A stretch of DNA of 63,511 bases, the filler included, from Octopus bimaculoides (lineage: Eukaryota): assembly GCF_001194135.2 (NCBI RefSeq). It is 5 parts of 5 records of this genome, joined end to end, with 100 filler letters (N's around TTAATTAATTAA, not from the genome) between each part and the next. Parts side by side here need not be neighbours in the genome. Positions count along the whole stretch, not along the records: positions 41,945 to 59,962 come from NC_069005.1; 4 more parts are not named here. One strand, 5' to 3'. The notes beneath the pieces are model-generated. The model was not told the origin of the DNA. It saw only the letters and a list, made by a program, of their open reading frames with translations, and ran no database searches. The position numbers and the translations under genes were made by a program. Positions 29,880 through 59,355 of the stretch are shown here, in pieces; the first letter of the stretch is position 1; every line of letters begins with the position of its first letter.

Positions 29880-30047
29880 CCTGGTTGGAGACCCAACCTT
29901 CCGAGTTCTTTTACACGGTTTAGAAAAACTTAAGGATCGTTGCAATAAGTTTGTGAATCTGAGAAGGGAATATGTTGAATAAAATCATAATTAACTGATC
30001 CTCCTGTGTTTTCTCTTACCCAAAGCCAGGAACTTGCAGCACCCTCG
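29880..30047 (+). mobile_element. mariner transposase 3' fragment with TIR remnant
   Basis: LHGLEKLKDRCNKFVNLRREYVE* (the mariner C-terminal GI.KL..RW.KC....G.YVE pattern), then gccaggaacttgcagcaccctcg. Confidence 0.75.
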
Positions 30048-30199
30048 CATATGTAAGCATGTATGTATGTATGTATGCCTTTTTTTTTTCTGTGCACAAT
30101 TTGTGACGGACCATGCCTTTCTTTTACTGAGACCAAATCGCATTTACGGACACAGGTAAAACGAACTTTCACCAACTACTCAGCGCATTTATTTGTGCA

Positions 30200-30420
30200 T
30201 TTCTGTCAATGCCATGCATGTCATAAGGTCTGACAATCTAGCAGAAGCCTCATTGGTAGTCGAAATCGGATATGCAATCTATTTGGGTGTATTTTCAAAA
30301 CATTGTCTGATTTAAAAAGCCACATCAGACGCCATGATGGTTCTAAGGTGTAAGTACAAGAGGTGGTCAGACTTTGCATAAGGAGTAGACAACCACAAGT
30401 ATGTATGTATGTATGTATGT
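30200..30420 (+). mobile_element. LINE 3' end (probably RTE-like) with degenerate C2H2 finger(s)
   Basis: 30210-30353 reads CHACHKV*QSSRSLIGSRNRICNLFGCIFKTLSDLKSHIRRHDGSKV*, followed ~45 bp later by a (TATG)n tail. Confidence 0.55.
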
Positions 30421-43467: not shown

Positions 43468-44094
43468 AGTTAATTTCAGTCTAATTTAATTAGAAATGAA
43501 ATAGGTGTAAATATCGAAAGATTTAAATCAACAATTTTGCTTTGGTGATTTTTTTTTTGCACTTTTTTCATCTTTAGTGTCTTTTAACTATTGAAATAGT
43601 CTTTTTTTTTTAAATTTAGAATTGACAACCTTGGTCCCAGGTTATGACTAGTTAACACTACTCTGAGTAACACTACCCCTTCCAAGGTTCACGCCCCCAC
43701 CTATATCTACAGCCACCCTGAAAATACCTTATGTTGCCTCCATAGTCAACTTAATGGGCTTTCTGCTTACTGGCCCCCATAATGCTCAGTAAGTTGTAGG
43801 CTCTGCAAAAAGAGGGACTTAGCTGTTGAAGTGAAACAAATTTAATTTTGAAACAGAAAGAAAAAATTTGAAATTAAAAACGATTATGAAAAAATTAAAT
43901 TAAAAAATTGTTTTTATTTTTCGCTTTGTTTTATTTTATTTTGTTTCATTATTATTTTTTTCCTTTCTTTTCTTTTTTTTTTCCTTTTGCTTTTGATGAG
44001 TGGCTTAAGCCAACAGTTGAATGGAACAAGCACAGGATTGACTGGGACAAGCCAGCAAGTGAATGCTTTTGCAATTTAAGAAATTATATATAAA

Positions 44095-44335
44095 TGTATG
44101 TATGTACGTACGTACGTATGTATGTATGATGTATGTATGTGTGTATGTATGTATGTGTGCATGTGTGTATATGTATGTATGTACGTACGTATGTGTGTAT
44201 GTGTATGTATGTATGTATGTATGTACGTATGTATGTTCATGTTTGTATATGTATTATGTATTATGTATGTATGTATGTATGTATGTATGTACGTATGTAT
44301 GTACGTATGTATGTACGTACGTATGTGTGTATATG

Positions 44336-44369
<34 letters not shown>

Positions 44370-44450
44370 CGTATGTATGTATATGTGTGTGTGTATGTGT
44401 GTATATGTATTATGTATATATATGTGTTTATGTATGTATATGTATTCATT
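44095..44450. repeat. (ATGT)n-derived compound microsatellite
   Basis: Direct reading of the sequence. Confidence 0.9.
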
Positions 44451-45289
44451 CATGCGTGTTTACCTTTTGCTGCTTGCCATTTATTAGAAAGTATAACAGA
44501 GACACTTGAATTAAAAGGAAGGAAAGAAAGCTGAGAGAGAGGAAGAGAGATGGGGGGGGGGAGCAGAGAGTGCAAGAGTGAGAAGGAAAATAGCAGATGA
44601 AGAAATAAGGAAGAGAATCCAAAGTCACAGTCTTCAGCAACAAGATAGTGCCAACAATCACACCAAAATCAAAACAAATATCTGCAAATCCCTATCATCC
44701 TCCAACTCCCTTAAACCGCCACCACCACCCCACCCTACATCACCTCCACCCGAAGAAGGTTTGGGGTGAGGTTGGTGGGGGGAGGGGTTGAGTCAGTACT
44801 TAGCTTAAGTTTTTTTTTTTTTGTTTTTTTTTCTTTTCATAGCATCATGGAGATAGCACCAGTCTATTTTGCAAGTTACATTCACAGCTAGACGAAGTGA
44901 GGTAATGTGGAATAAAATATTCTGGTTAGAAACAGAATGAAGTGCCCGGTAATAGATTTGATCTGACAATCTGGGAATAAGTTAAATTGATCCACGTCTA
45001 CAGCACCACCAACAATTATAGCAAATTATGTAACATAATTTTTCTAGTGTGCGGCAGAAGACAGAAGATCCCAATTTCTTGGTTAGGGGAGTGAGGCAGA
45101 GACATTGAAACTAACATCAAGCAATGACTGCTACTTTGTTTACAAAATCTGGAGGGATGGAAAGAAGTAGAGTGACCGCTCACCTGAGTTGCACTCAGAA
45201 CATAGAGTGAGGAAATGAAGTAGAGTCCGGCATTTAATCCCTCCCACCACACGCTTCTGTTGCCTAGGCAATAATAATAATAATAATAA

Positions 45290-45875
45290 TCCTTTCTACA
45301 ATGGGGACAAGGCCTGAAATTTGGGGGAGGGGGCTAGTCAATTTCATTGATCCCAGTGCGCAACCTGGAAAGGATGAAAGGCTAAGTCAACCTTGGCAGC
45401 CACAAAGCATTTTGTTCAGCATGCCAACAATTCTGCCAGTTCACTGCCTTAATGATTTCAAATTTTGGCACAAGGCCAGCAATTTCAAGGGAGGGAGTAA
45501 GTCGATTACATCGACTCCAGCACTCAACTAGTACTTATTTTATTGACCCCAGAAGAATGAAAGGCCAAGTAGAACTTGACAGAATTTGAACTCTGAACAT
45601 AAAAATAGGTGAAACGCCACAAAGCATTTTGTCTGGCATGCTAGTGATTCTACCAGCTCACCCACCTTAGCAAAATAATTACAACAATGATGGTTTCAAA
45701 TTTTGGCACAAGGCCAGCAATGTCCGGGGGGTGTGCTCAACTGGTACTTATTTTATCGGAAAGGATGAAAAGCAAAGTTGACCTTGACAGAATTTGAACT
45801 CAGAACCTAAGACAGACAAAATGCCGCAGAACATTTTGCCCAAATGCAAACAATTCTGCCAGCTCACCACCTTAG
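45290..45875 (-). mobile_element. Tandem SINE family B copies, CpG-decayed
   Basis: aaaggatgaaaggc, gaatttgaactc and ttctgccagctcaccacctta motifs, with CG converted to TG/CA. Confidence 0.75.
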
Positions 45876-46321
45876 CAAATAATAATAATAATAGTAATAT
45901 AGGATTGCCAAGCACAGCCTACATCTCATACAATGCCACAACCTATACAACACATAATCACATAGTCACCACCCAATAATACAAGCACAACCAACACAAC
46001 ACATACTAAACAAAATCAACACCTAAATATAACACAGCTTGCACAGCACGTAGCCTATACAATCACTACCCAATAACGTAACAGACTGACATAACACAAG
46101 CTCCACACCAGAGACCACACCTCTTGGGGTGTTCTTTGACATGGCATGCCAAGGTATGTAACACAAAGAAGGGAAGTATGTGCTTCGTTAAAACTGTTTC
46201 TCAGAAATAAAATTAACCCCTTTCTTTCTATTGAAATACACACTGCTTTGTTTCAATTAATTTTGAAAATAATGAAGGACATAGTGAAATATAATTTGTC
46301 ATTATTCCCCCTTTAGCACAA

Positions 46322-47379: not shown

Positions 47380-47905
47380 TTAAATTAGCATAGAAGTTTG
47401 ATGGAAGGTTTTAATTTAAATCTCTTGAAAACAGGGAAATTGTGTCATAGAACCAAGGTGTGGTCTCCAGTGGGTTAGTATCAAAACGGTTAAGCTTGCT
47501 TTCAAAGAAATAATTTTGCTCTGTTAAGCACATCAAGAACATTGTAACTCAATCTTTGGAAAATAAGCTAGTTATTAGAAAAGTAACTTGTTCGTTCATT
47601 TTCAAATATGATATTACTTATGTAGGAGTGTGATAATTAATTAAACATTTCTTAGGGATGGGAAGAGGGGTAGAGAAAGAGGCTGGGAACCAGAGCTCTA
47701 CTGGATCGCCATCAAATACTGAATCACAAGCCACACAACACACACCCTAAACAATCACCATCCAGTAATGTAACGGCCTGCATGGCACATACACTACATA
47801 ACTGCAGTCTGGCACACACAACACCACCCAACAAACTAACACAACTCACATTGCACAACAAATAAGATACTAAAAGATACTGCACAACAAACGAGATACT
47901 AAAAT

Positions 47906-48210
47906 AACACCAGAAACAAATCTCACAACACCAGAAACAAAATTCAGAACATCAAAAACAAACCTCACAACACAAAAAAACAAACATCACAACACTGGAA
48001 ACCAAATCTCACAACACTGAGGACAAATCTCACAATACAGTTGGATGCCCCTCCTAACACCAGCAAACAAACCCCACAACTCCAGGAACAAAACCTCACA
48101 ACACCAGGAACAAAACCTCACAACACCAGAAACAAAACCTCACAACACCATGAACAAAGCTCACAACACTGGAAACAACATCACAATACCAGAAACAAAC
48201 CTCACAACAA
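47906..48210 (+). repeat. 21-22-bp minisatellite (AACACCAGAAACAAACCTCAC)n
   Basis: About 14 diverged units are visible. Confidence 0.85.
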
Positions 48211-48819
48211 AGCAACACTGATATAGTATAGAAACACACTTCTATATCAATGCTACATAAACCTCAGGAANNNNNNNNNNNNNNNNNNNNNNNNNNNNNN
48301 NNNNNNNNNNNNNNNNNNNNNNNNNNNNNNNNNNNNNNNNNNNNNNNNNNNNNNNNNNNNNNNNAGCACTGCACAACCACACATAAAACCAATGAAAACA
48401 TAATGATAATCTCTCTTACATAGGCACAAGGCTAGAAATTTGGGGGAAAGAGACCAGTTGATTATATTGACCCTTCAGTATTTGACTGGTACTTTTACTA
48501 TACAGATTTTTTCCAGGACAGAGAAGAGGCCAAGTGGATCCTGGAAGGATTTGAACTCAGAACATAAAGGGATGTAGCTAAATACCACAAAACCTTTTGC
48601 CTGGCATCTCTAAATCATTGGGTAAAAGAGAAATAAGGAGCACAGTTGGTAACAGTCAAGCGTCAACTATTTCTCGTGAGATACGAAGAAAGAAAAAGAG
48701 TAAAAGGGGAAAATGGCTTCTAAAAACAAAAAAAAAAAATGGAGATTTCAAAAGCAAAAAAATTTTTTTTAAATTACACGAAACACAAATTAGAAATAAA
48801 CACACACAGTTTGTGATGT

Positions 48820-49745
48820 GATGTAATAGGAAGTCATATGGCATGATGGGAGGTCATGTGATGTGGTGCAAAGAAAATGACGTGTGAGGTGATGCTGCAT
48901 GATGAGGTACCATGGGAAACCATGTGGCATGATGGGATGTCATATGAAAGGATGAGGATATGTGAAGAGACAGGGGAGATGGGAAGGATGTTGGGAATGT
49001 CATTTGTGGGAGGAGGGGAAGGAGAGGAAGTCACGTGGGATGATGGGGGGATGCGATGCAAAGAAAGCTACATGTTAACTGATGTTTACAAGTTAACTGA
49101 CGTGGTATGATGGGAAACATGTAGCATGATGAGAATTCACATGAAAGGATGAGGTGTTGTGAGAGAACTGAAAGTGATGGGGACAACATGTGGGAGGAGG
49201 CAAAGGAGAGGAAGTCATGTGATGTGATGCAAAGAAAGTTATGACACGCGAACTGATGCTGCATGAGATAGTATGATGGGAAGCCATGTGACATAATGCA
49301 AAGTCACAGGAACAATGGGAAGTCATTCAAAGGAATGGTGAATTATTGGGAGGGAGAGGGAGTCATGTGGGAGAAGGGGAAGGATGACAAAATATGTGGC
49401 ATGATGGAAAGTCATGTGGAAGGGTGGGGTGTCATGAAGGAGAAAGGGAAGGATGGAAAACCATATGACATGATGAGGAATCATGTGGGGGTGATGGAAA
49501 GTCATGTGGTATGATGATGCAAAGGAAGTTATGACATGCAAAATGATGCTGCCTGACATGGTATGATGGGAAACCATGTTGTGGAAGAGAAACTCATGTA
49601 GCGTGGTGTGAGGTTGTAATGGTGTAATGCAAGACCGGGTGGCGTGATGGGTAGTCATGTGGTTTAACACGAAATTCATGTAGTGTGGTATAAATTCATG
49701 TGATGTGACGTGATGCCATGTGGTGTGAAATGAGATTCGTGACAC
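48820..49745 (+). repeat. Degenerate ATG/GTG/GGA-rich tandem repeat
   Basis: Recurrent catgtggcatgatggga and gaggaagtcatgtg..gatgcaaagaaag blocks, with a higher-order period of roughly 200 bp. Confidence 0.65.
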
Positions 49746-50664
49746 AATTAAAGGCCAAAAAATACAAATTGAAAAAAAAAATAATAAAATAAAATTGAAA
49801 ACAGAAAAATTAAGAAAAAATAAAAGTGGGGGGGAGGTTCTGGTTCACCATGATCGATGTTGAGAAAATACTTAATATTTCGGGGCATGACCCGTCATCA
49901 AGTTTAGTTTCAGTTTCCAAACCAGCCCCTCCTATCTACCTGAAGCTGTTTGTGTGCAGATTATGCATGTGTTTGTGCAAGTAAATGACTGCACAAAGGC
50001 ATGCCTATGCATGTCTACTTGTGTGGGTGTGCATGAGTGTGTGTGTGTGTATGCATGAGTGTGTGTGCATACATACAGACATACATGCATGCATGTTCAT
50101 GTATGAACAGACCATATTCATTATGAAATACATCCCCATTCTGTCTTTCCTTCTAATTACTCAACAGCCTCACACCAACAAACATTATACTCCATACCTT
50201 TCCTAATGACCACCACCAATAACTCTGCCTAACAGTTATAATCATCGATTAATTAACTACCCTGTTCCTTTGTAATCAATAGTTTAGAGAATAACAGTTT
50301 TAAACATTTAGAGATGGCAAAAGATAGAATGCAGTACCAACACATGTATTTTTGCGTATGTGTACGCATGCACCCATATCTGCATATGTGTCTGCATGCA
50401 TGTCATTGTATGTGTTTCTGAATGTGTGTTAGTGCATTTGACTACATGTGTGTGCATGTGTGCATGCATGTATGTGTGTACACAAAAGTGTCTACATGTA
50501 TGTATGTATGTATGATGTATGTATACATGCATGCATGAAAGTATGGATATATGTGTGAATGTATGGTAGCTTGCATATATGCAGGTATGTATGTGTATAT
50601 GCTCACTGATAAGATGGCACCCTTCTGATCAGAAATAGTGATCAACATGTATGCATCTATGTGC

Positions 50665-50706
<42 letters not shown>

Positions 50707-50910
50707 GTGTGTGTGCCTATATATGAATATGCTCAAATGTGTCTACATGTGTATGCATGTGAATATGTAGATGTCAACATGCATATGTCTATATATGCAT
50801 GTATATATGTGTGCATGTATCTGTGTTGATGTGTGTATGAATGAATCTGTACGTAAATATGTGTGCATGTATATACATATGCGTGTTGATGCATGTGTAT
50901 GTGTATATGA

Positions 50911-50950
<40 letters not shown>

Positions 50951-51574
50951 ATTCCATGACATGGTAAAAACAATGCTGAATTTTGAGAAGGTAATGCAAT
51001 AAAACAGAATGCCTCAAGCCTGTCCCCCAGTATATAGCAGGTACGTACATAGCATCAAGGATACTGCTGCCACCCACCATGAGGTGGAGGGGAAGGAGGA
51101 GTGGAGAATGATGAGGAAGTAGAGACATCATTCCCCCTCTAAACACTACAATAAATATCACAAGCCAACAAGGGAACCTACACACAGCAGCTTAATCTAC
51201 AGAAAATGGCAGACAAATCTCCCTCAAATTACACCTTACTGTCTACAACTTAAATAAAGGATATGTTAGATAATGTAGTCTTAGCCCTTGATTAAAAAAA
51301 AAGGAAAGGAAAAAACCAAGAGGTGATGGTCATGGACGTGGAAACATTTAATCATGGTTGACCTGGGGCTAAACAGTAACACTGACCGAACTATATATGT
51401 TCTATAATGCTATTATTTCAAACAGATGTTATTTATGACAAAGCAGCAACCAGCTTTTTTAAAGAATTCTATGGAAGAATAAACATTACTGGAAAACAAA
51501 CGGTAAAGTAATGCTAAATGCTGTTATGTTCACCAATACCATTCTCAGCAAAGCTTTTATAAGTATTAATAATA

Positions 51575-51827
51575 ATAATAATAATAATCCTTTCTACTAT
51601 TATAGGCACAAGCCCTGAAATTTGTGGGGAAGGGACTAGTTGATTACATAGACCCAGTGTATCACTGGTACTTAATTTACCGACCCCCAAAAGAATGAAA
51701 GGCAAAGTTAACCTTGGCAGAATTTGAACTCAGAATGTAAAGGCAGATGAAATACTGTGAAGCATTTTGTCCAGCATGCTAACAATTCTGCCAGCTCGCC
51801 ACCTTAATAATAATGATGATAATGATG

Positions 51828-51866
<39 letters not shown>

Positions 51867-52380
51867 GTTTCAAATGTTGGTACATGGCCAGGAAGTTGAC
51901 CTTTGCGGCATTTGAACTCAGAACATAAAGATGGACGAGATGCCACTAAGCATTTCATCCATCATCCTACCAATTCTGCCAGCTTACCGACTTTGCTTTC
52001 ATAATAATAATGATGATGATTTCAAATTTTGGCACAAGACCAACAAGATTGGGGGAGGGGTAAATTGACTACATCAATCCCAATTAATAATAATAATAAT
52101 AATAATAATTTCTATCTTAGGCACAAAGCCACAAATTAGAAGAGAGAGAGAGAATGCATTCAAGTAAATCAACCCTAGTATTTAACTGGTACTGGTGTTC
52201 TATTTTTGTTTTTCAATCCCAAAGTCAACCAAACTCCACACACACACACAGACACACACATACAGACACACACATTTTGCACCCACCAAGCAGCAGGATC
52301 TGCACTCTGAATGTCAAAGGATATAACTAAAATAATATTGCAAGGCATTTAGTCCGGCCATTCTAACCCTTTCAACCGCT
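51575..52380 (-). mobile_element. Tandem SINE family B copies separated by (TAA)n, CpG-decayed
   Basis: Same motifs as above, with taataataat spacers. Confidence 0.75.
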
Positions 52381-52446: not shown

Positions 52447-52507
52447 TTACACTGCATCAACATAAGCAGAAGCTGGAAACAAATCTTCATGTCTTGCTGC
52501 CATATAT
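52447..52507 (-). CDS. MSL3: MSL3-like gene, terminal coding exon
   Basis: Strong acceptor (ttttttctttttgtgtttgtttcAG). The 61-nt exon reads (E)YMAARHEDLFPASAYVDAV*, matching MSL3 FLAEYHDDFFPESAYV. TAA stop at 52449-52447. Confidence 0.88.
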
Positions 52508-53163
52508 CTGAAACAAACACAAAAAGAAAAAAAAAAAAGAATTACAAATTAAGGAAGATATTCAAGAAAGTTCTATATTACAAATATAAAGTGCATCATG
52601 GCCTTCCCCTCATCACTCTACCTCCTCCAATGCATGTATATATACATACAAGCACACATTCTATGTAGTCAGAAAAATAAGGGAGAAGGTAACATCTATG
52701 GACCATTGATGAGGAGATTACAAATCCTACCCAAGATATACTTTAAGGTTCATACCTATTATTACAATGTGTAACAAATTCCTTTTCTTTTTTTTTTTTT
52801 TGTCTTTGGTCAGTAATTGTTATTTTCTATTTGCTTCTAGCTAGAAATCAAAAGAAATCACTACTATTCTCTTCAAACTTTGCTTTTCTGACCTGGACAT
52901 CAATGTTTTGAAACTGACCTATTTTCCATTACATCTCAGACAGATTCAGCATTGACTTGATGAAACAGAAATATCAATATTCTGCTCAATACTACAGATT
53001 TGCTAGTAAATATTAATATTATCTCGGTTGAAAAAACTTTGATAATGTAAATATGCTAATAGTTACCATGGATAGCAAAAATCACACAAAAACTGGGATA
53101 TCACACCTGTTTTATAGGTAGAAATACCAAGTTAAAGTGATGCATTTTGAGTAGATATTAAGA

Positions 53164-53491
53164 ATAATAATAAATGGAGCAAAACGCATATAAACAATAA
53201 GTTCCTTTAATTCCTACATATGTTTCAAAATATATGTGCACTCTACTCCAAAGAAGTAAGAGGTGTTGGAATTGCACATATATTCATCGTCAGGGAACCA
53301 ACATACAAAAGCAAGACATATGCTACATTTAGCATATGTCTTGCTTTTGTATGTTGGTTCCTTGATGATGAATTTATGTGCAATTCCAGCACCTCTTACA
53401 TCTTTGGAGTAGAGTGCACATATATTTTGAAACATATGTAGGAATTAAAGGAACTTATTGTTTATATGCGTTTTGCTCCATTTATTATTAT
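53164..53491. mobile_element. Foldback/MITE-like element: 162-bp inverted arms, 4-nt loop, 8-bp TSD
   Basis: Arms 53164-53325 and 53330-53491 are reverse complements with 5 mismatches; loop CATT. Flanked by direct repeat TATTAAGA (53156-53163, 53492-53499). Confidence 0.85.
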
Positions 53492-53519
53492 TATTAAGAT
53501 ATATATATATATATAAAGG

Positions 53520-53664
53520 GTGCAGAAACTCACAGACTTGGGATATGAGACTTTACCACATCCTCCATTTTTTTTAGCATTTAAACACGTTTTTAAGTGA
53601 TAAAACTTTCAGGTCCAAACCAGAGGTGGAATCAGCTTTCAAAGATTTCTTAGCATCAAAGCCA
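53520..53664 (+). mobile_element. mariner transposase internal fragment (MSL3 intron)
   Basis: VQKLTDLGYETLPHPP[YSPDL deleted]FF*HLNTFLSDKTFRSKPEVESAFKDFLASKP. Confidence 0.8.
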
Positions 53665-53817
53665 ATAAGGCATAAATAATCTCAATGTCGATGGCAGAGA
53701 TGCATAGATGCTCACAGTTCATACTTTGACTTATCAAAACATTTCTATTGTTAATTTTTCCAGAATAAACTTATGTTTCTGAAATCAGTCATTATTTTCA
53801 GAACAACCTAATAACAG

Positions 53818-54012
53818 TGACGGGGTAGGTGGCATGGACATACTTCTCACAGGGAAGTGGGTGGATATGGTCATAAAGGCAGTCAGAGTGTGCGATAGGG
53901 TGCTCAAGCTTAGGCTCTCTTACAGAATAGTATAGTGAGAATTATCTCTGCCTATTCCCCTCAAGTGGGCCTACCAAATGAACAGAAGGACCACTTTTAT
54001 GATGCTCTTATT
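53818..54012 (+). mobile_element. RTE-type LINE APE endonuclease fragment (MSL3 intron)
   Basis: GVGGMDILLTGKWVDMVIKAVRVCDRVLKLRL/LQNSIVRIISAYSPQVGLPNEQKDHFYDAL, with one frameshift. Confidence 0.75.
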
Positions 54013-54218
54013 TGATAGCTGATCTGACAAAGAGTCAGAGAGGCAGGCTATTAGCTTGATATAGAATGAAACACATAAGCTATCAGTCTGACAAGGAGTG
54101 AGACAGGTGGGCTTTTAGTTTGACATGGAGTGAAACACATCAGTTCTTTATACTGCAATTATCCAACATGAAATAATGTTCAAAAGTGACCGAAAAAAAA
54201 AATATATATTTCACTTAC

Positions 54219-54303
54219 TCTAGGAAATTTTCCAAATATCCAAGAAGTATTCCAAGTTTTAGTTCAGGCAAGTCCATTTTGCCAAGCACTTCTGGTAATT
54301 TAA
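54219..54303 (-). CDS. MSL3: MSL3-like gene, penultimate coding exon
   Basis: Acceptor tatttgtttcattttAG and donor GA|GTAAGT. The 85-nt exon reads (V)KLPEVLGKMDLPELKLGILLGYLENFL(E), matching MSL3 VKLPEILGKM...LLKHFDLFL. Phases fit both neighbouring exons. Confidence 0.9.
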
Positions 54304-54494: not shown

Positions 54495-54624
54495 TAAACC
54501 AGACAGCTGGTCTTCATAAACTTTTTCTTCTTAGTGTTCTTTGACATCTACTTTGCTTCATGAATCTTGAACATTGTATATACTCTGCACAGTCTCATGC
54601 ACAGCTGGTGTATGTTTGTTTGTT

Positions 54625-54945
54625 GCTTGCTTCATGCTCTTGATTGATACGGCTGGGGTCATCACAGGTTAGTGGCCCCAGAGATGTCATCATGTGTAGA
54701 GCCAACCAGGTCCACCAGTGCTCTCCGTTGCTGGCAGTCCCGTGCCAGCACCTCTGCAACTTCCAAGGTGATGTCAAGCCTCTGGAGATCTGGGACTGGC
54801 ATGTGGCCTCTTCCAGCCCACAGCTACTGCATCAAATAAGAGTAAAGCTCTGGTAGAATGATCTAACAGGAGATGGAAGACCTGTCCATAACAGCACATG
54901 CAGTGGATAGCTATGAGGTGGGAGGTGGCAGGCTGATGATCAGAT
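54625..54945 (-). mobile_element. RTE LINE 3' fragment (same family as 57757-58935)
   Basis: Shares gctggggtcatc.caggttagtgg.cccaga..atcatgtgtagagcc..ccaccagtgctctc with the 57.8-kb copy. Confidence 0.75.
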
Positions 54946-55396
54946 CAAATTAACAAATTCAACTGTCAGCTTTGTTGACATTAGAAAAGGCCCAAATGTG
55001 GACTGCTAGCTTTGGAAATGGTTTTCCAACTGCTAGCTTTGCAGAATAAGACTATAGAATCACTTATATGTCAATGTCTACAAAGTTCTGCCAGCTGAGC
55101 GAAAACCTGATTCTGTGTGGGAAGAAGCTTGCTTCCAAACCACATGGTTCCGGGTTCATTCCCACAGCATGACACCTTTGGCAAGTGTCTTCTACTATAG
55201 ACTAAAACCAAACAAATCCTTGTGAGAGGACATGGTAGACAGAAAGTGAAAAAAGCCTGTCATGGCTCTGTGTGTGTGTATGCCTGCCTTTATGTGTGTG
55301 GGTTTGTCCCCCACCACTACTTAATAAACTGTGTTATATATATATACATATATCATATACATATATACACACATACATAAATAAATAAATAAATAA

Positions 55397-55474
<78 letters not shown>

Positions 55475-56726: not shown

Positions 56727-57270
56727 CATGGGGTCCCTCTGAAGAGTGCCTGAAGTAACATTACTCGAGAGGATGCATAGCTCAGAGATCAGGGAGTCTC
56801 TCCAGATCAACCTGCTACTTTCCCGCATTGAGAGATCACAGCTCCGGCACCATAGACATGTGATTAGAATGTAGCAGGAAAGAATCAAATTGCAAGACAG
56901 ATTCTTCAAGCTGAGCCAACCAGAAGACCTAGATGTAGACCAAGAACGAGATGGTTGGATAATATCCATAGTCTCGGTTGGTTATGCTTGAGAATCAGGC
57001 CAAAAAGTGTAATGATGGTTGCTTCCCAAAGAACCATATTGAGGAGGTACCTGAGGACTCTATCCTTATGACCGGCAGAAGGCCTAGGAGTAGACCAAGA
57101 ACAAGATGGTAGGATAATATCCATAGACTCAGTTGGTTGTGCTTGGGAATCCAGACAGAAAGTGTAATGATGGCTACCTCAGACAGGACCCTATGGAGGA
57201 GGTGCCTGACGACTCTCCCTTCATAACCCACTCCCCAGGAATTGCAGGTAGAGAAAATGAATGGATGGAT
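56727..57270 (+). mobile_element. RTE (Expander/Rex3-like) LINE 3' end with an internal 155-bp tandem duplication
   Basis: SSEIRESLQINLLLFRIERSQLRH..HVIRM..RQILQAEPTRRPRCRPRTRWLDNI. The unit agaccaagaac.agatgg recurs at 56937 and 57092. Confidence 0.8.
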
Positions 57271-57756: not shown

Positions 57757-58935
57757 TTGCCAGCTTACTTCATGCTTTTGCTTGATGGGGCTGGGGTCAT
57801 CCCAGGTTAGTGGTCCCAGAAACATCATCATGTGTAGAGCCGACTAGATCCACCAGTGCTCTCAATAGCTAGCGGTGCCATGCCAGCCCATCTGCATCCT
57901 GTAAGGTGACATCAAGCCTCTGGAAACCTTCCTCAATTATGTCCAGCAATCTGGTGCAGGGCCTGCCACAAGGCCTCTTCCGGCCTGCAGCTACTGTGTT
58001 GAATGAGAGTAAAGCCCTTGTAGGATGATCTAGCAGGAGATGGAGGATATGTCCATACCAGCGCATGCAACAAATAGCTATTAGGTGGGAAGCAGCAGGC
58101 CAATGCATGCACACATGTGTTTCTTTGTTGGAAACATGATGGTACCATCCAATGTTCTCGATGGTCCTCAGGACTCTGCTATCAAAGTTGTTGATCCTCT
58201 TTACCAAGGTCTTCGAGAGGGGCCACATTTTTGCTCCATAGAGGAGAATGGAGAGGGAAGATGAGTTGTAGTTTTGTCTTCTGGGAGATAGAGCAGTGCC
58301 ACCAAAGAGGCCTCTATAGGAAGTACATGGCCTTGGCAACCAGACATCTGCAGGTGATCTTTGGGGGTCAAGTCTCCATTGTTGATGACTGTGGAGCCCA
58401 AGTAGATGAAGGAGCTCACAAACTCCATAACATCAGGGCCAATATAGGTGAGTGTCCAGGCCATCTCCGACATGTGTTGGCTTGGTCTTCACCCAACTCA
58501 CCTGAAGGCCAAGCTTTGCTGATTCTTCTCCGTATATCATCAGTGTGTCCCTGAGCTGGTCAATCAAAGTGCTGAATAGAGTGATATCATCCACATACAC
58601 CAGGTCAGTAAGGTAGTAGTTCCAAAGATAATTCCAGAAACTCACTCACAGACCCTGGTCATCAGATAATCAATGACACAGTTGAAGAGGTCAGGGTTAG
58701 CCACACAGCCCTCTCTGACTCCGCTGTTGATGGAGAACCAGTCAGAGTCCTTTCCATTCACCCAAACGTAGCTCTCAGCATTGCTATAGAGCCATTAAAA
58801 CAGAGCAGTGATCTTGGTGGGTGCACTGACAAGCTTGAGAATTTTCTAGAGGGATGTGTGCTCAACCACGTCGAAAGCTACCTCAAGGTCAACAAAATGC
58901 AGTGTAGAAGTAGCAATCTTTGCGGAACCCCCAAG
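57757..58935 (-). mobile_element. RTE LINE reverse transcriptase to 3' end (degenerate)
   Basis: INSGVREGCVANPDLFNCVID, LTDLVYVDDITLF, FIYLGSTV, INNFDSRVLRTI, RWYGHI, GRKRPCGRPCTR across frames. Confidence 0.85.
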
Positions 58936-59219: not shown

Positions 59220-59355
59220 CAAATAAACGTAACAATTGCTGAGGACCACAGATGATGGAGGGTTGTGGAGGACATTGACTATAGAAAGATTGAGGTAACA
59301 ATCTCCACGTGAAGATTTCATCAATACTACTTTGATCCGTTTGTGAATGGAAGAC
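59220..59355 (-). CDS. MSL3: MSL3-like (MRG domain) gene, third-to-last coding exon
   Basis: Acceptor ttgttcttgattgcAG and donor G|GTAAGT. The 136-nt exon reads VFHSQTDQSSIDEIFTWRLLPQSFYSQCPPQPSIICGPQQLLRLF, resembling the MSL3 MRG-domain segment (vertebrate VLSWKLVP...PPPPSYIYGAQHLLRLF, recalled). Ends in phase 1. Confidence 0.88.

What the first reader, a model, noticed from the sequence alone, without database searches (positions are those of the whole stretch)
53156..53499. 162-bp near-perfect hairpin element in the last intron of MSL3
Seen: arms 53164-53325 and 53330-53491, 4-nt loop, 8-bp TSD TATTAAGA. The five mismatches all cluster at 53255-53293, while the outer ~90 bp and inner 32 bp are perfect. 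Three mismatches are G.T on +, which become A.C in the MSL3 sense pre-mRNA. Each arm also has an internal 12-bp inverted repeat (aatatatgtgca/tgcacatatatt). Established: 8-bp TSDs typify hAT/P/Merlin-type transposition; long dsRNA is an ADAR and Dicer substrate; ADAR favours A opposite C. Inference: an all-TIR foldback transposon that puts a strong editing or endo-siRNA hairpin into the pre-mRNA of a chromatin regulator.
Basis: partly seen in the sequence, partly recalled or inferred. Interest (0 to 1): 0.72.

Follow-up and report, generated by a model that had tools for sequence, protein, structure and literature searches.

The report
Palindromic transposon-like insert in octopus MSL3 intron
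A 328-base, almost perfectly self-complementary insertion with an 8-base target duplication sits in the last intron of the Octopus bimaculoides MSL3 gene; it looks like an ordinary small non-coding "foldback" DNA transposon, a kind of hairpin-forming repeat that octopus genomes already carry in large numbers.

Summary
The arms are 53164-53325 and 53330-53491, the loop is CATT, and five mismatches lie at 53255-53293. An 8-bp direct repeat TATTAAGA flanks the element, and each arm holds a 12-bp inverted repeat.

The gene context is also right. The window is Octopus bimaculoides (identical to GCA_001194135.2). The element lies on the opposite strand inside the 1,711-bp last intron of MSL3.

The best reading is a non-coding, all-inverted-repeat (foldback-like) MITE-type DNA transposon copy. 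I could not show that it belongs to a family. No second copy exists in the 18-kb piece, in 147 kb of three octopus MSL3 loci, or in any searchable collection, and the octopus genome itself could not be searched.

The hAT assignment is not supported beyond TSD length: the termini are ATAATAAT, not CAG-like.

O. sinensis and O. vulgaris lack the element. But they carry a mariner fragment in place of the whole target region, so there is no clean empty site.

As RNA the sense strand folds into a 162-bp stem (-259 kcal/mol). Published work makes ADAR hyper-editing the likely fate in octopus. It makes endo-siRNA production unlikely in molluscs.

This is one ordinary example of a known class. Interest is low.

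The parts
53156..53163 (.). Left copy of the 8-bp target-site duplication TATTAAGA
   Evidence: Chance of a flanking repeat of 8 bp or more is 3.5e-4. TA at positions 4-5.
53164..53325 (.). Left arm of the palindrome (162 nt). It starts ATAATAATAAATGGAGC.
   Evidence: No tandem subrepeats. The ACATAT/ATATGT motif occurs 5 times against 0.23 expected.
53326..53329 (.). 4-nt loop CATT at the centre of symmetry
53330..53491 (.). Right arm (162 nt), 157/162 complementary to the left arm. It ends GCTCCATTTATTATTAT.
53492..53499 (.). Right copy of the target-site duplication TATTAAGA. The terminal (TTA)5 run at 53482-53496 crosses from the element into it.
53255..53293 (.). Span of the left arm that holds all five arm-arm mismatches (partners at 53362-53400). 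In the sense RNA they are three A.C, one A.A and one U.U.
53229..53284 (.). Internal 12-bp inverted repeat within the left arm (53229-53240 and 53273-53284, 32 nt apart). It is mirrored in the right arm, where one copy is broken by the 53374 mismatch.
   Evidence: I14, D2. The arm alone folds only weakly (z = -1.8).
53499..53515 (.). (TA)8.5 microsatellite immediately next to the insertion site
52508..54218 (-). Last intron of MSL3 (1,711 bp; GTAAGT donor, CAG acceptor). The element lies 727 nt from the 5' splice site and 656 nt from the 3' splice site.
   Evidence: The spliced peptide is 93/93 identical to the C-terminus of XP_029651036.2.
54219..54303 (-). Penultimate MSL3 coding exon (..KLPEVLGKMDLPELKLGILLGYLENFLE)
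   Evidence: Pfam MRG, E = 2.8e-13.
52447..52507 (-). Coding part of the last MSL3 exon (YMAARHEDLFPASAYVDAV, stop at 52447-52449)
59220..59355 (-). Antepenultimate MSL3 exon (VFHSQTDQ...GPQQLLRLF)

Best explanation
The feature is one copy of a small, non-coding DNA transposon. It is foldback-like, MITE-type, with inverted repeats along its whole 328-bp length.

It inserted by cut-and-paste, with a staggered 8-bp cut. The target was AT-rich DNA beside a (TA)n run in the last intron of Octopus bimaculoides MSL3 (inferred from the anatomy).

The two arms were probably identical, or nearly so, at birth. Such an element can arise when one end of a parent transposon is duplicated in inverted orientation (inference). 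The arms now differ at 5 of 162 positions.

The element has no reading frame of its own. Because it is transcribed within the MSL3 pre-mRNA, the sense RNA can fold into a 162-bp, nearly perfect double-stranded stem (shown by folding).

In octopus the expected fate of such a stem is promiscuous A-to-I hyper-editing by ADAR, followed by removal with the intron. This step is inferred from published genome-wide data, not shown for this locus. Dicing into siRNAs is not the expected fate, and no consequence for the MSL3 protein is expected.
For: - The palindrome with its exact ends, and the 8-bp TSD, stand well above chance.
- No coding capacity. The mirror-image 73-aa ORFs have no Pfam family and no homologue.
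- No Rfam family reaches its threshold, and no tRNA-like part exists.
- A short motif (ACATAT/ATATGT) is repeated 5 times per arm, about 22 times the local background. Transposase-binding subterminal repeats look like this.
- The TSD has TA at positions 4-5, as in the Buster-type hAT target nnnTAnnn (PMC3517528). This is weak evidence.
- Arm-arm divergence (3.1%) is below the O. bimaculoides / O. sinensis-vulgaris intron divergence (7.0-7.6%), so the insert is probably young and lineage-specific.
- The element is absent from the O. sinensis and O. vulgaris loci.
- Octopus genomes carry hAT, Merlin, Mutator and MITE families (PMC13282606).
- Another long-inverted-repeat element lies about 40 kb away in the record (about 32 kb along the fetched loci), upstream of the same gene (L005 4820-5470).
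- O. bimaculoides has an exceptionally high fraction of loci that form long, near-perfect dsRNA, and the strongest hyper-editing signal measured. A palindromic MITE is the most edited repeat in Xenopus (PMC5625713).
Against: - Only one copy is known. A sequence model of the arm finds nothing else in the 18-kb piece or in 147 kb of octopus loci.
- Exact-pattern scans of the metagenome, viral and prokaryotic collections found nothing related.
- The octopus genome itself could not be searched, so 'family' is unproven.
- The termini (ATAATAAT...) match no superfamily signature I could test. hAT TIRs are normally 5-27 bp and CAG-like.
- There is no clean empty site. In O. sinensis and O. vulgaris a mariner fragment replaces the whole target region.
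- The window and L004 are the same short-read-based assembly, with the same 94-N gap. The palindrome therefore has no independent sequence confirmation.
- Editing is not shown for this locus.
Confidence: 0.6

Rival explanations
1. It is a head-to-head dimer of a short retroposon. A roughly 160-nt RNA with an (AUU)n tail was copied into the nicked target by a LINE reverse transcriptase. The cDNA then snapped back on itself, which gives (AAT)n-body'-loop-body-(ATT)n flanked by a TSD of variable length.
For: - Both outer ends are (AAT)3/(ATT)3-like.
- The (TTA)5 run continues from the element into the TSD, which looks like tail-target microhomology.
- The SINE-like repeats in the same window all carry (AAT)n/(ATT)n tails (families D6, D7 and D9).
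- RT fragments of LINE type lie nearby.
- An 8-bp TSD is compatible with target-primed reverse transcription.
Against: - The 'tail' is only three units long.
- The arm has no tRNA-like or other promoter part.
- The arm resembles none of the SINE copies in 165 kb.
- A snap-back copy would be expected to run on into flanking DNA or stop short. Here both arms end at exactly symmetric positions.
Confidence: 0.12
2. It is a one-off palindromic insertion made during double-strand-break repair. A hairpin-capped or snap-back DNA fragment from elsewhere was captured at a staggered break. It is not a mobile family.
For: Only one copy is seen in any data at hand. The termini carry no recognisable transposon signature.
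Against: - The clean 8-bp duplication and exactly symmetric ends are typical of transposase action.
- The arms are not copied from neighbouring sequence.
- The motif enrichment within the arms suggests an evolved element.
Confidence: 0.1
3. It is an assembly artefact, wholly or in its inner part. The scaffolded short-read assembly folded a sequence back on itself at a palindromic k-mer.
For: - The assembly has N gaps (48271-48364), and the window is the same assembly as L004, so there is no independent read-level support.
- Long palindromes are hard for de Bruijn assemblers (own knowledge).
Against: - Fold-back artefacts give perfect arms and no TSD. Here five arm-specific differences exist.
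- The two distinct flanks continue into sequence orthologous to O. sinensis and O. vulgaris on both sides.
- The 8-bp duplication is significant.
Confidence: 0.08
4. It is a selected hairpin-RNA gene, a miRNA- or hpRNA-type small-RNA precursor hosted in the MSL3 intron.
For: The stem is very stable. The mismatches avoid the centre and the ends of the stem.
Against: - No Rfam family comes near its threshold; the best hit is mir-3149 at 37.5 bits against a gathering score of 100.
- A 162-bp stem is far longer than a miRNA precursor.
- It is not conserved in O. sinensis or O. vulgaris.
- Molluscs show no dedicated endo-siRNA pathway (PMC12479628).
Confidence: 0.03

Closest known systems
Palindromic Harbinger MITEs of Xenopus tropicalis (about 200 bp), the most hyper-edited repeat family in frog (Porath et al. 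2017, PMC5625713)
   Same: Both are short, non-coding DNA-transposon derivatives whose whole sequence is roughly a palindrome. A single copy therefore folds into a tight dsRNA and needs no inverted neighbour to become an ADAR substrate.
   Different: Harbinger elements make 3-bp TSDs (own knowledge); this one has 8 bp. The frog family is high-copy with demonstrated editing. Here both copy number and editing are unknown.
hAT-superfamily MITEs (for example Mar and Vege of Drosophila willistoni, PMC3517528)
   Same: 8-bp TSD, AT-rich, non-coding, a few hundred bp long. The TSD has central TA as in the Buster family.
   Different: hAT TIRs are 5-27 bp and start CAG-like. Here the inverted repeat is 162 bp and starts ATAATAAT. 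No transposase partner is known.
Foldback elements in the strict sense (Drosophila FB, Arabidopsis FARE, Meloidogyne Tm1; Mutator/Phantom-related, PMC3169594)
   Same: Very long terminal inverted repeats make up most or all of the element. There are MITE-like non-coding members, and Tm1 has TSDs of 8-10 bp.
   Different: FB-type TIRs are composite arrays of short tandem subrepeats with, most often, 9-bp TSDs. These arms have no tandem subrepeats and the TSD is 8 bp.
Drosophila hairpin-RNA (hpRNA) loci that yield endo-siRNAs
   Same: A long, near-perfect intramolecular inverted repeat that is transcribed by Pol II.
   Different: hpRNA loci depend on a Dicer-2/AGO2 siRNA pathway, for which no evidence was found in molluscs (PMC12479628). 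This element is not conserved between octopus species.

Membership tests
MITE (miniature inverted-repeat transposable element) | Small size (under about 800 bp) and no coding capacity | tested here: met
   328 bp. The only ORFs are mirror-image 73-aa frames with no Pfam hit and no homologue.
MITE (miniature inverted-repeat transposable element) | Terminal inverted repeats flanked by a target-site duplication | tested here: met
   162-nt arms that reach the exact ends, with the 8-bp TATTAAGA on both sides.
MITE (miniature inverted-repeat transposable element) | Many dispersed, similar copies in the genome | tested here: inconclusive
   No second copy in the 18-kb piece or in 147 kb of octopus loci. 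The 2.7-Gb genome (size from my own knowledge) could not be searched with the tools.
hAT superfamily | 8-bp TSD | tested here: met
   A 6-8 bp reading is possible because pair 53163/53492 is ambiguous.
hAT superfamily | Target consensus nTnnnnAn (Ac family) or nnnTAnnn (Buster family) | tested here: inconclusive
   TATTAAGA fails the Ac pattern on both strands. It fits Buster (TA at positions 4-5), but this happens about 10% of the time by chance in AT-rich DNA. One site cannot define a consensus (for the definitions).
hAT superfamily | Short TIRs (5-27 bp) with CAG/TAG-like termini | tested here: not met
   The termini are ATAATAATAAAT / ATTTATTATTAT and the inverted repeat is 162 nt. Definition from PMC3517528.
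hAT superfamily | An autonomous partner that encodes a hAT transposase and has matching ends | not testable with these tools
   There is no searchable octopus genome or repeat library.
Foldback (FB / Mutator-Phantom-like) elements | Long TIRs built of tandem short subrepeats | tested here: not met
   TRF finds no tandem array inside the arms. Definition from PMC3169594.
Foldback (FB / Mutator-Phantom-like) elements | 9-bp TSD (range 8-10 in Tm1) | tested here: inconclusive
   8 bp is at the edge of the reported range.
piggyBac / Kolobok-type (TTAA target) | TTAA duplication with the family's characteristic termini | tested here: not met
   TTAA lies inside the 8-bp repeat. Reading it as the TSD leaves four further repeated bases unexplained. 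It also gives ends GAAT...ATTA, which are not the CCC...GGG ends of piggyBac (family features from my own knowledge).
Known structured RNA families (miRNA precursors and others, Rfam 15) | Score at or above the family gathering threshold | tested here: not met
   The best hits in the element are mir-3149 at 37.5 bits (threshold 100) and SpF43 at 34.1 bits (threshold 70).
ADAR hyper-editing substrate (long near-perfect dsRNA in a transcript) | Long, nearly perfect intramolecular duplex within a transcribed region | tested here: met
   162-bp stem with five 1x1 mismatches, -258.8 kcal/mol, on the sense strand of the MSL3 intron.
ADAR hyper-editing substrate (long near-perfect dsRNA in a transcript) | Clustered A-to-G differences between RNA and DNA | not testable with these tools
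   No RNA-seq access. Genome-wide precedent in O. bimaculoides comes from PMC5625713.
hpRNA / endo-siRNA locus | The host has a dedicated siRNA Dicer/Ago pathway, and phased 21-23-nt reads come from the stem | not testable with these tools
   No small-RNA data are available here. A survey of molluscs found no evidence of such a pathway (PMC12479628), which argues against membership.

The most novel reading that the evidence does not exclude
The element is a member of a recently active, still unclassified family of fully palindromic 8-bp-TSD transposons in O. bimaculoides. Copies of this family would supply a measurable share of the unusually abundant near-perfect dsRNA that drives octopus hyper-editing. 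This particular copy, which carries an AAUAAA at its upstream end in the sense RNA (53481-53486), would influence 3'-end formation or nuclear retention of the MSL3 transcript.
Probability: 0.1. Interest if true: 0.45.

Novelty: new member of a known kind. Interest (0 to 1): 0.2.

Why it matters
It matters little on its own. Palindromic, MITE-like insertions in introns are a known source of ADAR substrates. O. bimaculoides is already documented as having an exceptional load of loci that form long, near-perfect dsRNA.

The copy would become useful in two ways. First, it is a clean, datable example: its arms are 3.1% diverged against about 7% between species. It could serve to define the family and the superfamily behind octopus hairpin repeats. 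Second, if RNA data showed that such a stem changes processing of a chromatin-regulator transcript, that would be of interest.

The comparison also shows a limit of the presence/absence test. The sister lineage has lost the target region under a mariner remnant, so absence of the element there cannot be read as an empty site.

Tried and rejected
**Protein homology searches**
- Searches with the 48-aa and 93-aa MSL3 peptides and with the 73-aa palindrome ORF found nothing.
- The word index missed even the organism's own protein. The full HMMER search later found it.

**Pattern scans for the element**
- Exact 20-23-nt patterns from the element's end and centre gave 0 hits in the metagenome (two scans) and viral collections.
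- The prokaryotic genomes gave one hit, a chance 20-mer in an alphaproteobacterial MAG that does not extend.

**Exact-protein look-ups**
- Look-ups of both palindrome ORFs and of an RT-fragment ORF found nothing.

**Known RNA families**
- Rfam at E <= 1 gave only sub-threshold hairpin and microsatellite hits. ARAGORN found no tRNA-like part.

**Other palindromic elements in the octopus loci**
- L005 17118-17437 has the same geometry (158-nt arms, 4-nt loop) but is a TA/TG microsatellite. I rejected it.
- L005 4820-5470 is a genuine but unrelated long-inverted-repeat element.

**Empty-site test**
- It fails for an informative reason. The region is replaced by a mariner fragment in O. sinensis and O. 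vulgaris.

**Literature**
- A full-text search for the element's own sequence strings found no paper.
- The O. bimaculoides genome paper is not held.

**Practical limit**
- Loci L003-L005 never appeared in the script sandbox. They were examined only through the alignment, pattern and model tools.

Full report
**Observation**

Reading the sequence and a repeat search confirm the palindrome.
- The arms are 53164-53325 and 53330-53491, 162 nt each, with the loop CATT at 53326-53329.
- There are exactly five non-complementary positions: 53293G/53362T, 53289G/53366T, 53281T/53374T, 53266T/53389G and 53255A/53400A. The outer 91 bp and the inner 32 bp of each arm are perfect.
- TATTAAGA occurs at 53156-53163 and again at 53492-53499.
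- Complementarity continues one pair into this repeat (53163A/53492T). The duplication could therefore formally be 6-8 bp; 8 bp is the simplest reading.
- The 12-bp inverted repeat inside each arm is real (I14).

Comparison with chance:
- The sense RNA folds at -258.8 kcal/mol, against -66.4 +/- 5.0 for shuffled sequence (z = -38).
- A flanking direct repeat of 8 bp or more at this spacing occurs at 3.5e-4 of positions in this microsatellite-rich piece.
- Confinement of five mismatches to 39 of 162 positions has p about 0.011.

**Organism and gene**

Three minus-strand exons splice to a 93-aa peptide. The exons are 59220-59355, 54219-54303 and 52447-52507, with GTAAGT donors and CAG acceptors.
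- The peptide is 93/93 identical to residues 576-668 of XP_029651036.2, 'male-specific lethal 3 homolog' of Octopus sinensis.
- It matches the human MSL3 MRG-domain structure 2Y0N (E = 8.5e-9).
- It matches Pfam MRG (E = 2.8e-13).

I fetched the genomic loci of O. sinensis (L002), O. vulgaris (L003) and O. bimaculoides (L004, L005).
- The window is base-for-base identical to O. bimaculoides GCA_001194135.2 across the intron.
- It carries the same 94-N gap. The window is therefore that same assembly and gives no independent support for the palindrome.
- The last intron is 52508-54218 (1,711 bp). The element lies 727 nt from the donor and 656 nt from the acceptor, on the strand opposite to '+'.

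**What the element contains**

- It has no coding capacity. The two 73-aa ORFs are mirror images produced by the palindrome, and they have no Pfam family and no homologue.
- No Rfam family approaches its threshold, and there is no tRNA-like segment.
- The arms contain no tandem subrepeats.
- The hexamer ACATAT/ATATGT occurs five times per arm, against 0.23 expected from the surrounding 18 kb. CATATG occurs twice, against 0.07 expected. This pattern resembles subterminal protein-binding repeats of DNA transposons, but that is only a resemblance.
- The ends are ATAATAATAAAT / ATTTATTATTAT.
- The (TTA)5 run at 53482-53496 crosses from the element into the duplication, and the insertion abuts a (TA)8.5 run.

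**Other copies**

None were found.
- BLASTN of the arm against the piece found nothing beyond the element itself.
- A sequence-only covariance model of the arm, searched over 147 kb of octopus loci, returned only the two arms themselves in L004.
- Exact-pattern scans of the metagenome, viral and prokaryotic collections gave nothing except one chance 20-mer.
- No tool allowed a DNA search of the octopus genome. This is the main gap: 'transposon family' is inferred from anatomy alone.

**Comparison between species**

- O. sinensis and O. vulgaris align well to the window from the penultimate exon down to 53547, and again from 52912 to the last exon.
- Intron divergence is 7.0% and 7.6% to O. bimaculoides, and 3.7% between the two.
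- Between those anchors O. bimaculoides has 634 bp: the element, one TSD copy and 290 bp of flanking sequence.
- The other two species instead have about 391 bp whose reverse strand encodes a mariner transposase fragment (Pfam PF01359, E = 2e-27).
- So the element is absent from those species, but its target site is absent too. Absence cannot be read as an empty site.
- The only dating is internal. The arms differ by 3.1% (5/162, with a wide Poisson error), less than half the between-species divergence. This fits an insertion, or an arm duplication, after the split.

**Mechanism**

The best-supported reading is a cut-and-paste insertion of a non-autonomous, fully inverted-repeat DNA transposon.
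- Shown: symmetric ends, a significant 8-bp duplication, no coding capacity, and enrichment of an internal motif.
- Inferred: transposase action, the origin of the palindrome by inverted duplication of one transposon end, and membership of a family.

Superfamily:
- The TSD length fits hAT, P, Merlin and a few others.
- The TSD fails the Ac-type nTnnnnAn consensus. It fits the Buster-type nnnTAnnn, which is weak evidence from a single site.
- The termini and the 162-nt inverted repeat do not fit the hAT definition of 5-27-bp, CAG-like TIRs (PMC3517528).
- It is not a Foldback element in the strict sense. Those have composite TIRs of tandem subrepeats and mostly 9-bp TSDs (PMC3169594; TRF result).
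- Octopus genomes do contain hAT, Merlin, Mutator and MITE families (PMC13282606).
- An unrelated long-inverted-repeat element lies upstream of the same gene (L005 4820-5470).

**RNA consequences**

In the MSL3 pre-mRNA the element is a 162-bp stem with five 1x1 mismatches: three A.C, one A.A and one U.U.
- Of the A.C adenosines, 53362 (UCA[A]GGA) and 53266 (CCA[A]CAC) have the 5' A that ADAR tolerates well. 53366 has a 5' C. The 5'-neighbour rule is from PMC5663115. The preference for A opposite C is from my own knowledge.
- Porath et al. found that O. bimaculoides has the strongest hyper-editing signal of the species tested (PMC5625713).
- They also found an exceptionally high fraction (4.4e-3) of loci able to form long, near-perfect dsRNA.
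- In Xenopus, a palindromic Harbinger MITE is the most edited repeat, precisely because one copy folds on itself.
- ADAR hyper-editing of this intronic stem is therefore the likely outcome, and a well-precedented, common one.
- The alternative, endo-siRNA production, is disfavoured. A 2025 survey of mollusc small RNAs found no evidence of a dedicated siRNA pathway despite many inverted repeats, and itself suggested editing as the sink for dsRNA (PMC12479628).
- Nothing indicates an effect on MSL3 splicing or protein.
- The sense RNA carries an AAUAAA at 53481-53486. I note this only as a possibility.

**Rival explanations**

- **Retroposon dimer.** A snap-back, head-to-head dimer of an (AUU)n-tailed retroposon is suggested by the (AAT)/(ATT) ends, the tail-TSD continuity and the (AAT)n-tailed SINE-like repeats nearby. 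However, the 'tail' is only three units, there is no promoter-like part, no monomer is seen, and the arm ends are exactly symmetric.
- **One-off capture at a break.** This cannot be excluded while copy number is unknown.
- **Assembly artefact.** This is unlikely because of the arm-specific differences, the distinct orthology-anchored flanks and the TSD, but it is not excluded by independent reads.
- **Selected small-RNA gene.** This is very unlikely.

**Verdict**

The interpretation as a foldback-type transposon is reasonable but rests on a single copy. The superfamily call is unsupported. The editing idea is plausible but ordinary for this organism, and the siRNA idea is unlikely. I classify the feature as a new member of a known kind, of low interest.

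Noticed in passing
L002 29466-29857 (O. sinensis) and the aligned stretch of L003 (O. vulgaris); corresponds to window 52913-53546: Both species carry a 391-bp fragment of a mariner transposase gene (reverse strand, Pfam PF01359, E = 2e-27). It replaces the O. bimaculoides sequence that holds the palindrome's target site. This looks like a truncated mariner insertion with an associated deletion, shared by the two species.
   Followed up: yes
L004 1-7168 and 10001-22166; L005: In the O. bimaculoides annotation MSL3 is split into two gene models: XP_014791000.1 (305 aa) and XP_014791003.1 (116 aa, 'MSL3-like 2'). O. sinensis and O. vulgaris have a single 668-aa protein. This is probably an annotation artefact of the gapped assembly.
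   Followed up: partly
window 45270-45900, 48408-48570, 51548-52150: Several diverged copies of a SINE-like repeat, about 160-250 bp long. Shared motifs are ...TTTCAAATTTTGGCACAAGGCCAGCAATTT... and ...GAATTTGAACTCAGAAC.... Each copy has an (AAT)n run on its left on the + strand, which is an (ATT)n 3' tail if the element lies on the minus strand.
   Followed up: partly
window 57872-58794 (-) and 54598-54944 (-): Decayed LINE-type reverse-transcriptase fragments lie in the two MSL3 introns (Pfam RVT_1, E = 3.3e-9, for 58436-58794). The stretches 54625-54791 and 57763-57929 are 82% identical copies.
   Followed up: partly
L005 4820-5470 (O. bimaculoides, upstream part of the MSL3 locus): An unrelated element with long inverted repeats: arms of at least 233 nt, 92% complementary, about 90-nt spacer. 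With small indels the repeat extends beyond the stretch I read. No clear TSD was seen.
   Followed up: partly
window 48271-48364: A run of 94 N (scaffold gap), identical to the gap in L004 26249-26342. This shows that the window comes from the same scaffolded assembly.
   Followed up: yes
window 47897-48219: A minisatellite of about 22 bp (AAACCTCACAACACCAGAAACA-like units, about 14 copies) lies just before the gap.
   Followed up: no
window 48800-49750: A degenerate tandem array (units related to GATG..GGAAGTCATGTGGCATGATGG). It creates long, low-complexity ORFs on both strands; these are not genes.
   Followed up: no
window 56921-57228 and 54023-54143: Two local tandem duplications: 153 bp x2 at 81% identity and 57 bp x2 at 81% identity. 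The second lies in the last MSL3 intron and is conserved in O. sinensis and O. vulgaris (A1 columns about 170-300).
   Followed up: no
window 44060-44460, 50000-50970, 55330-55470: Long (TGTA/TATG/TG/TA)n compound microsatellites. They produce all the sub-threshold mir-297 / mir-3149 Rfam hits, which are false positives.
   Followed up: yes
L002 about 30010-30400 and the same place in L003: A SINE-like insertion of about 400 bp (…GGTAAGTAGCTTGTTTACCGACCA…GTTCAGTCCC…) is present in the last intron of O. sinensis and O. vulgaris and absent from O. bimaculoides. It explains why their intron is longer even though they lack the palindrome.
   Followed up: partly
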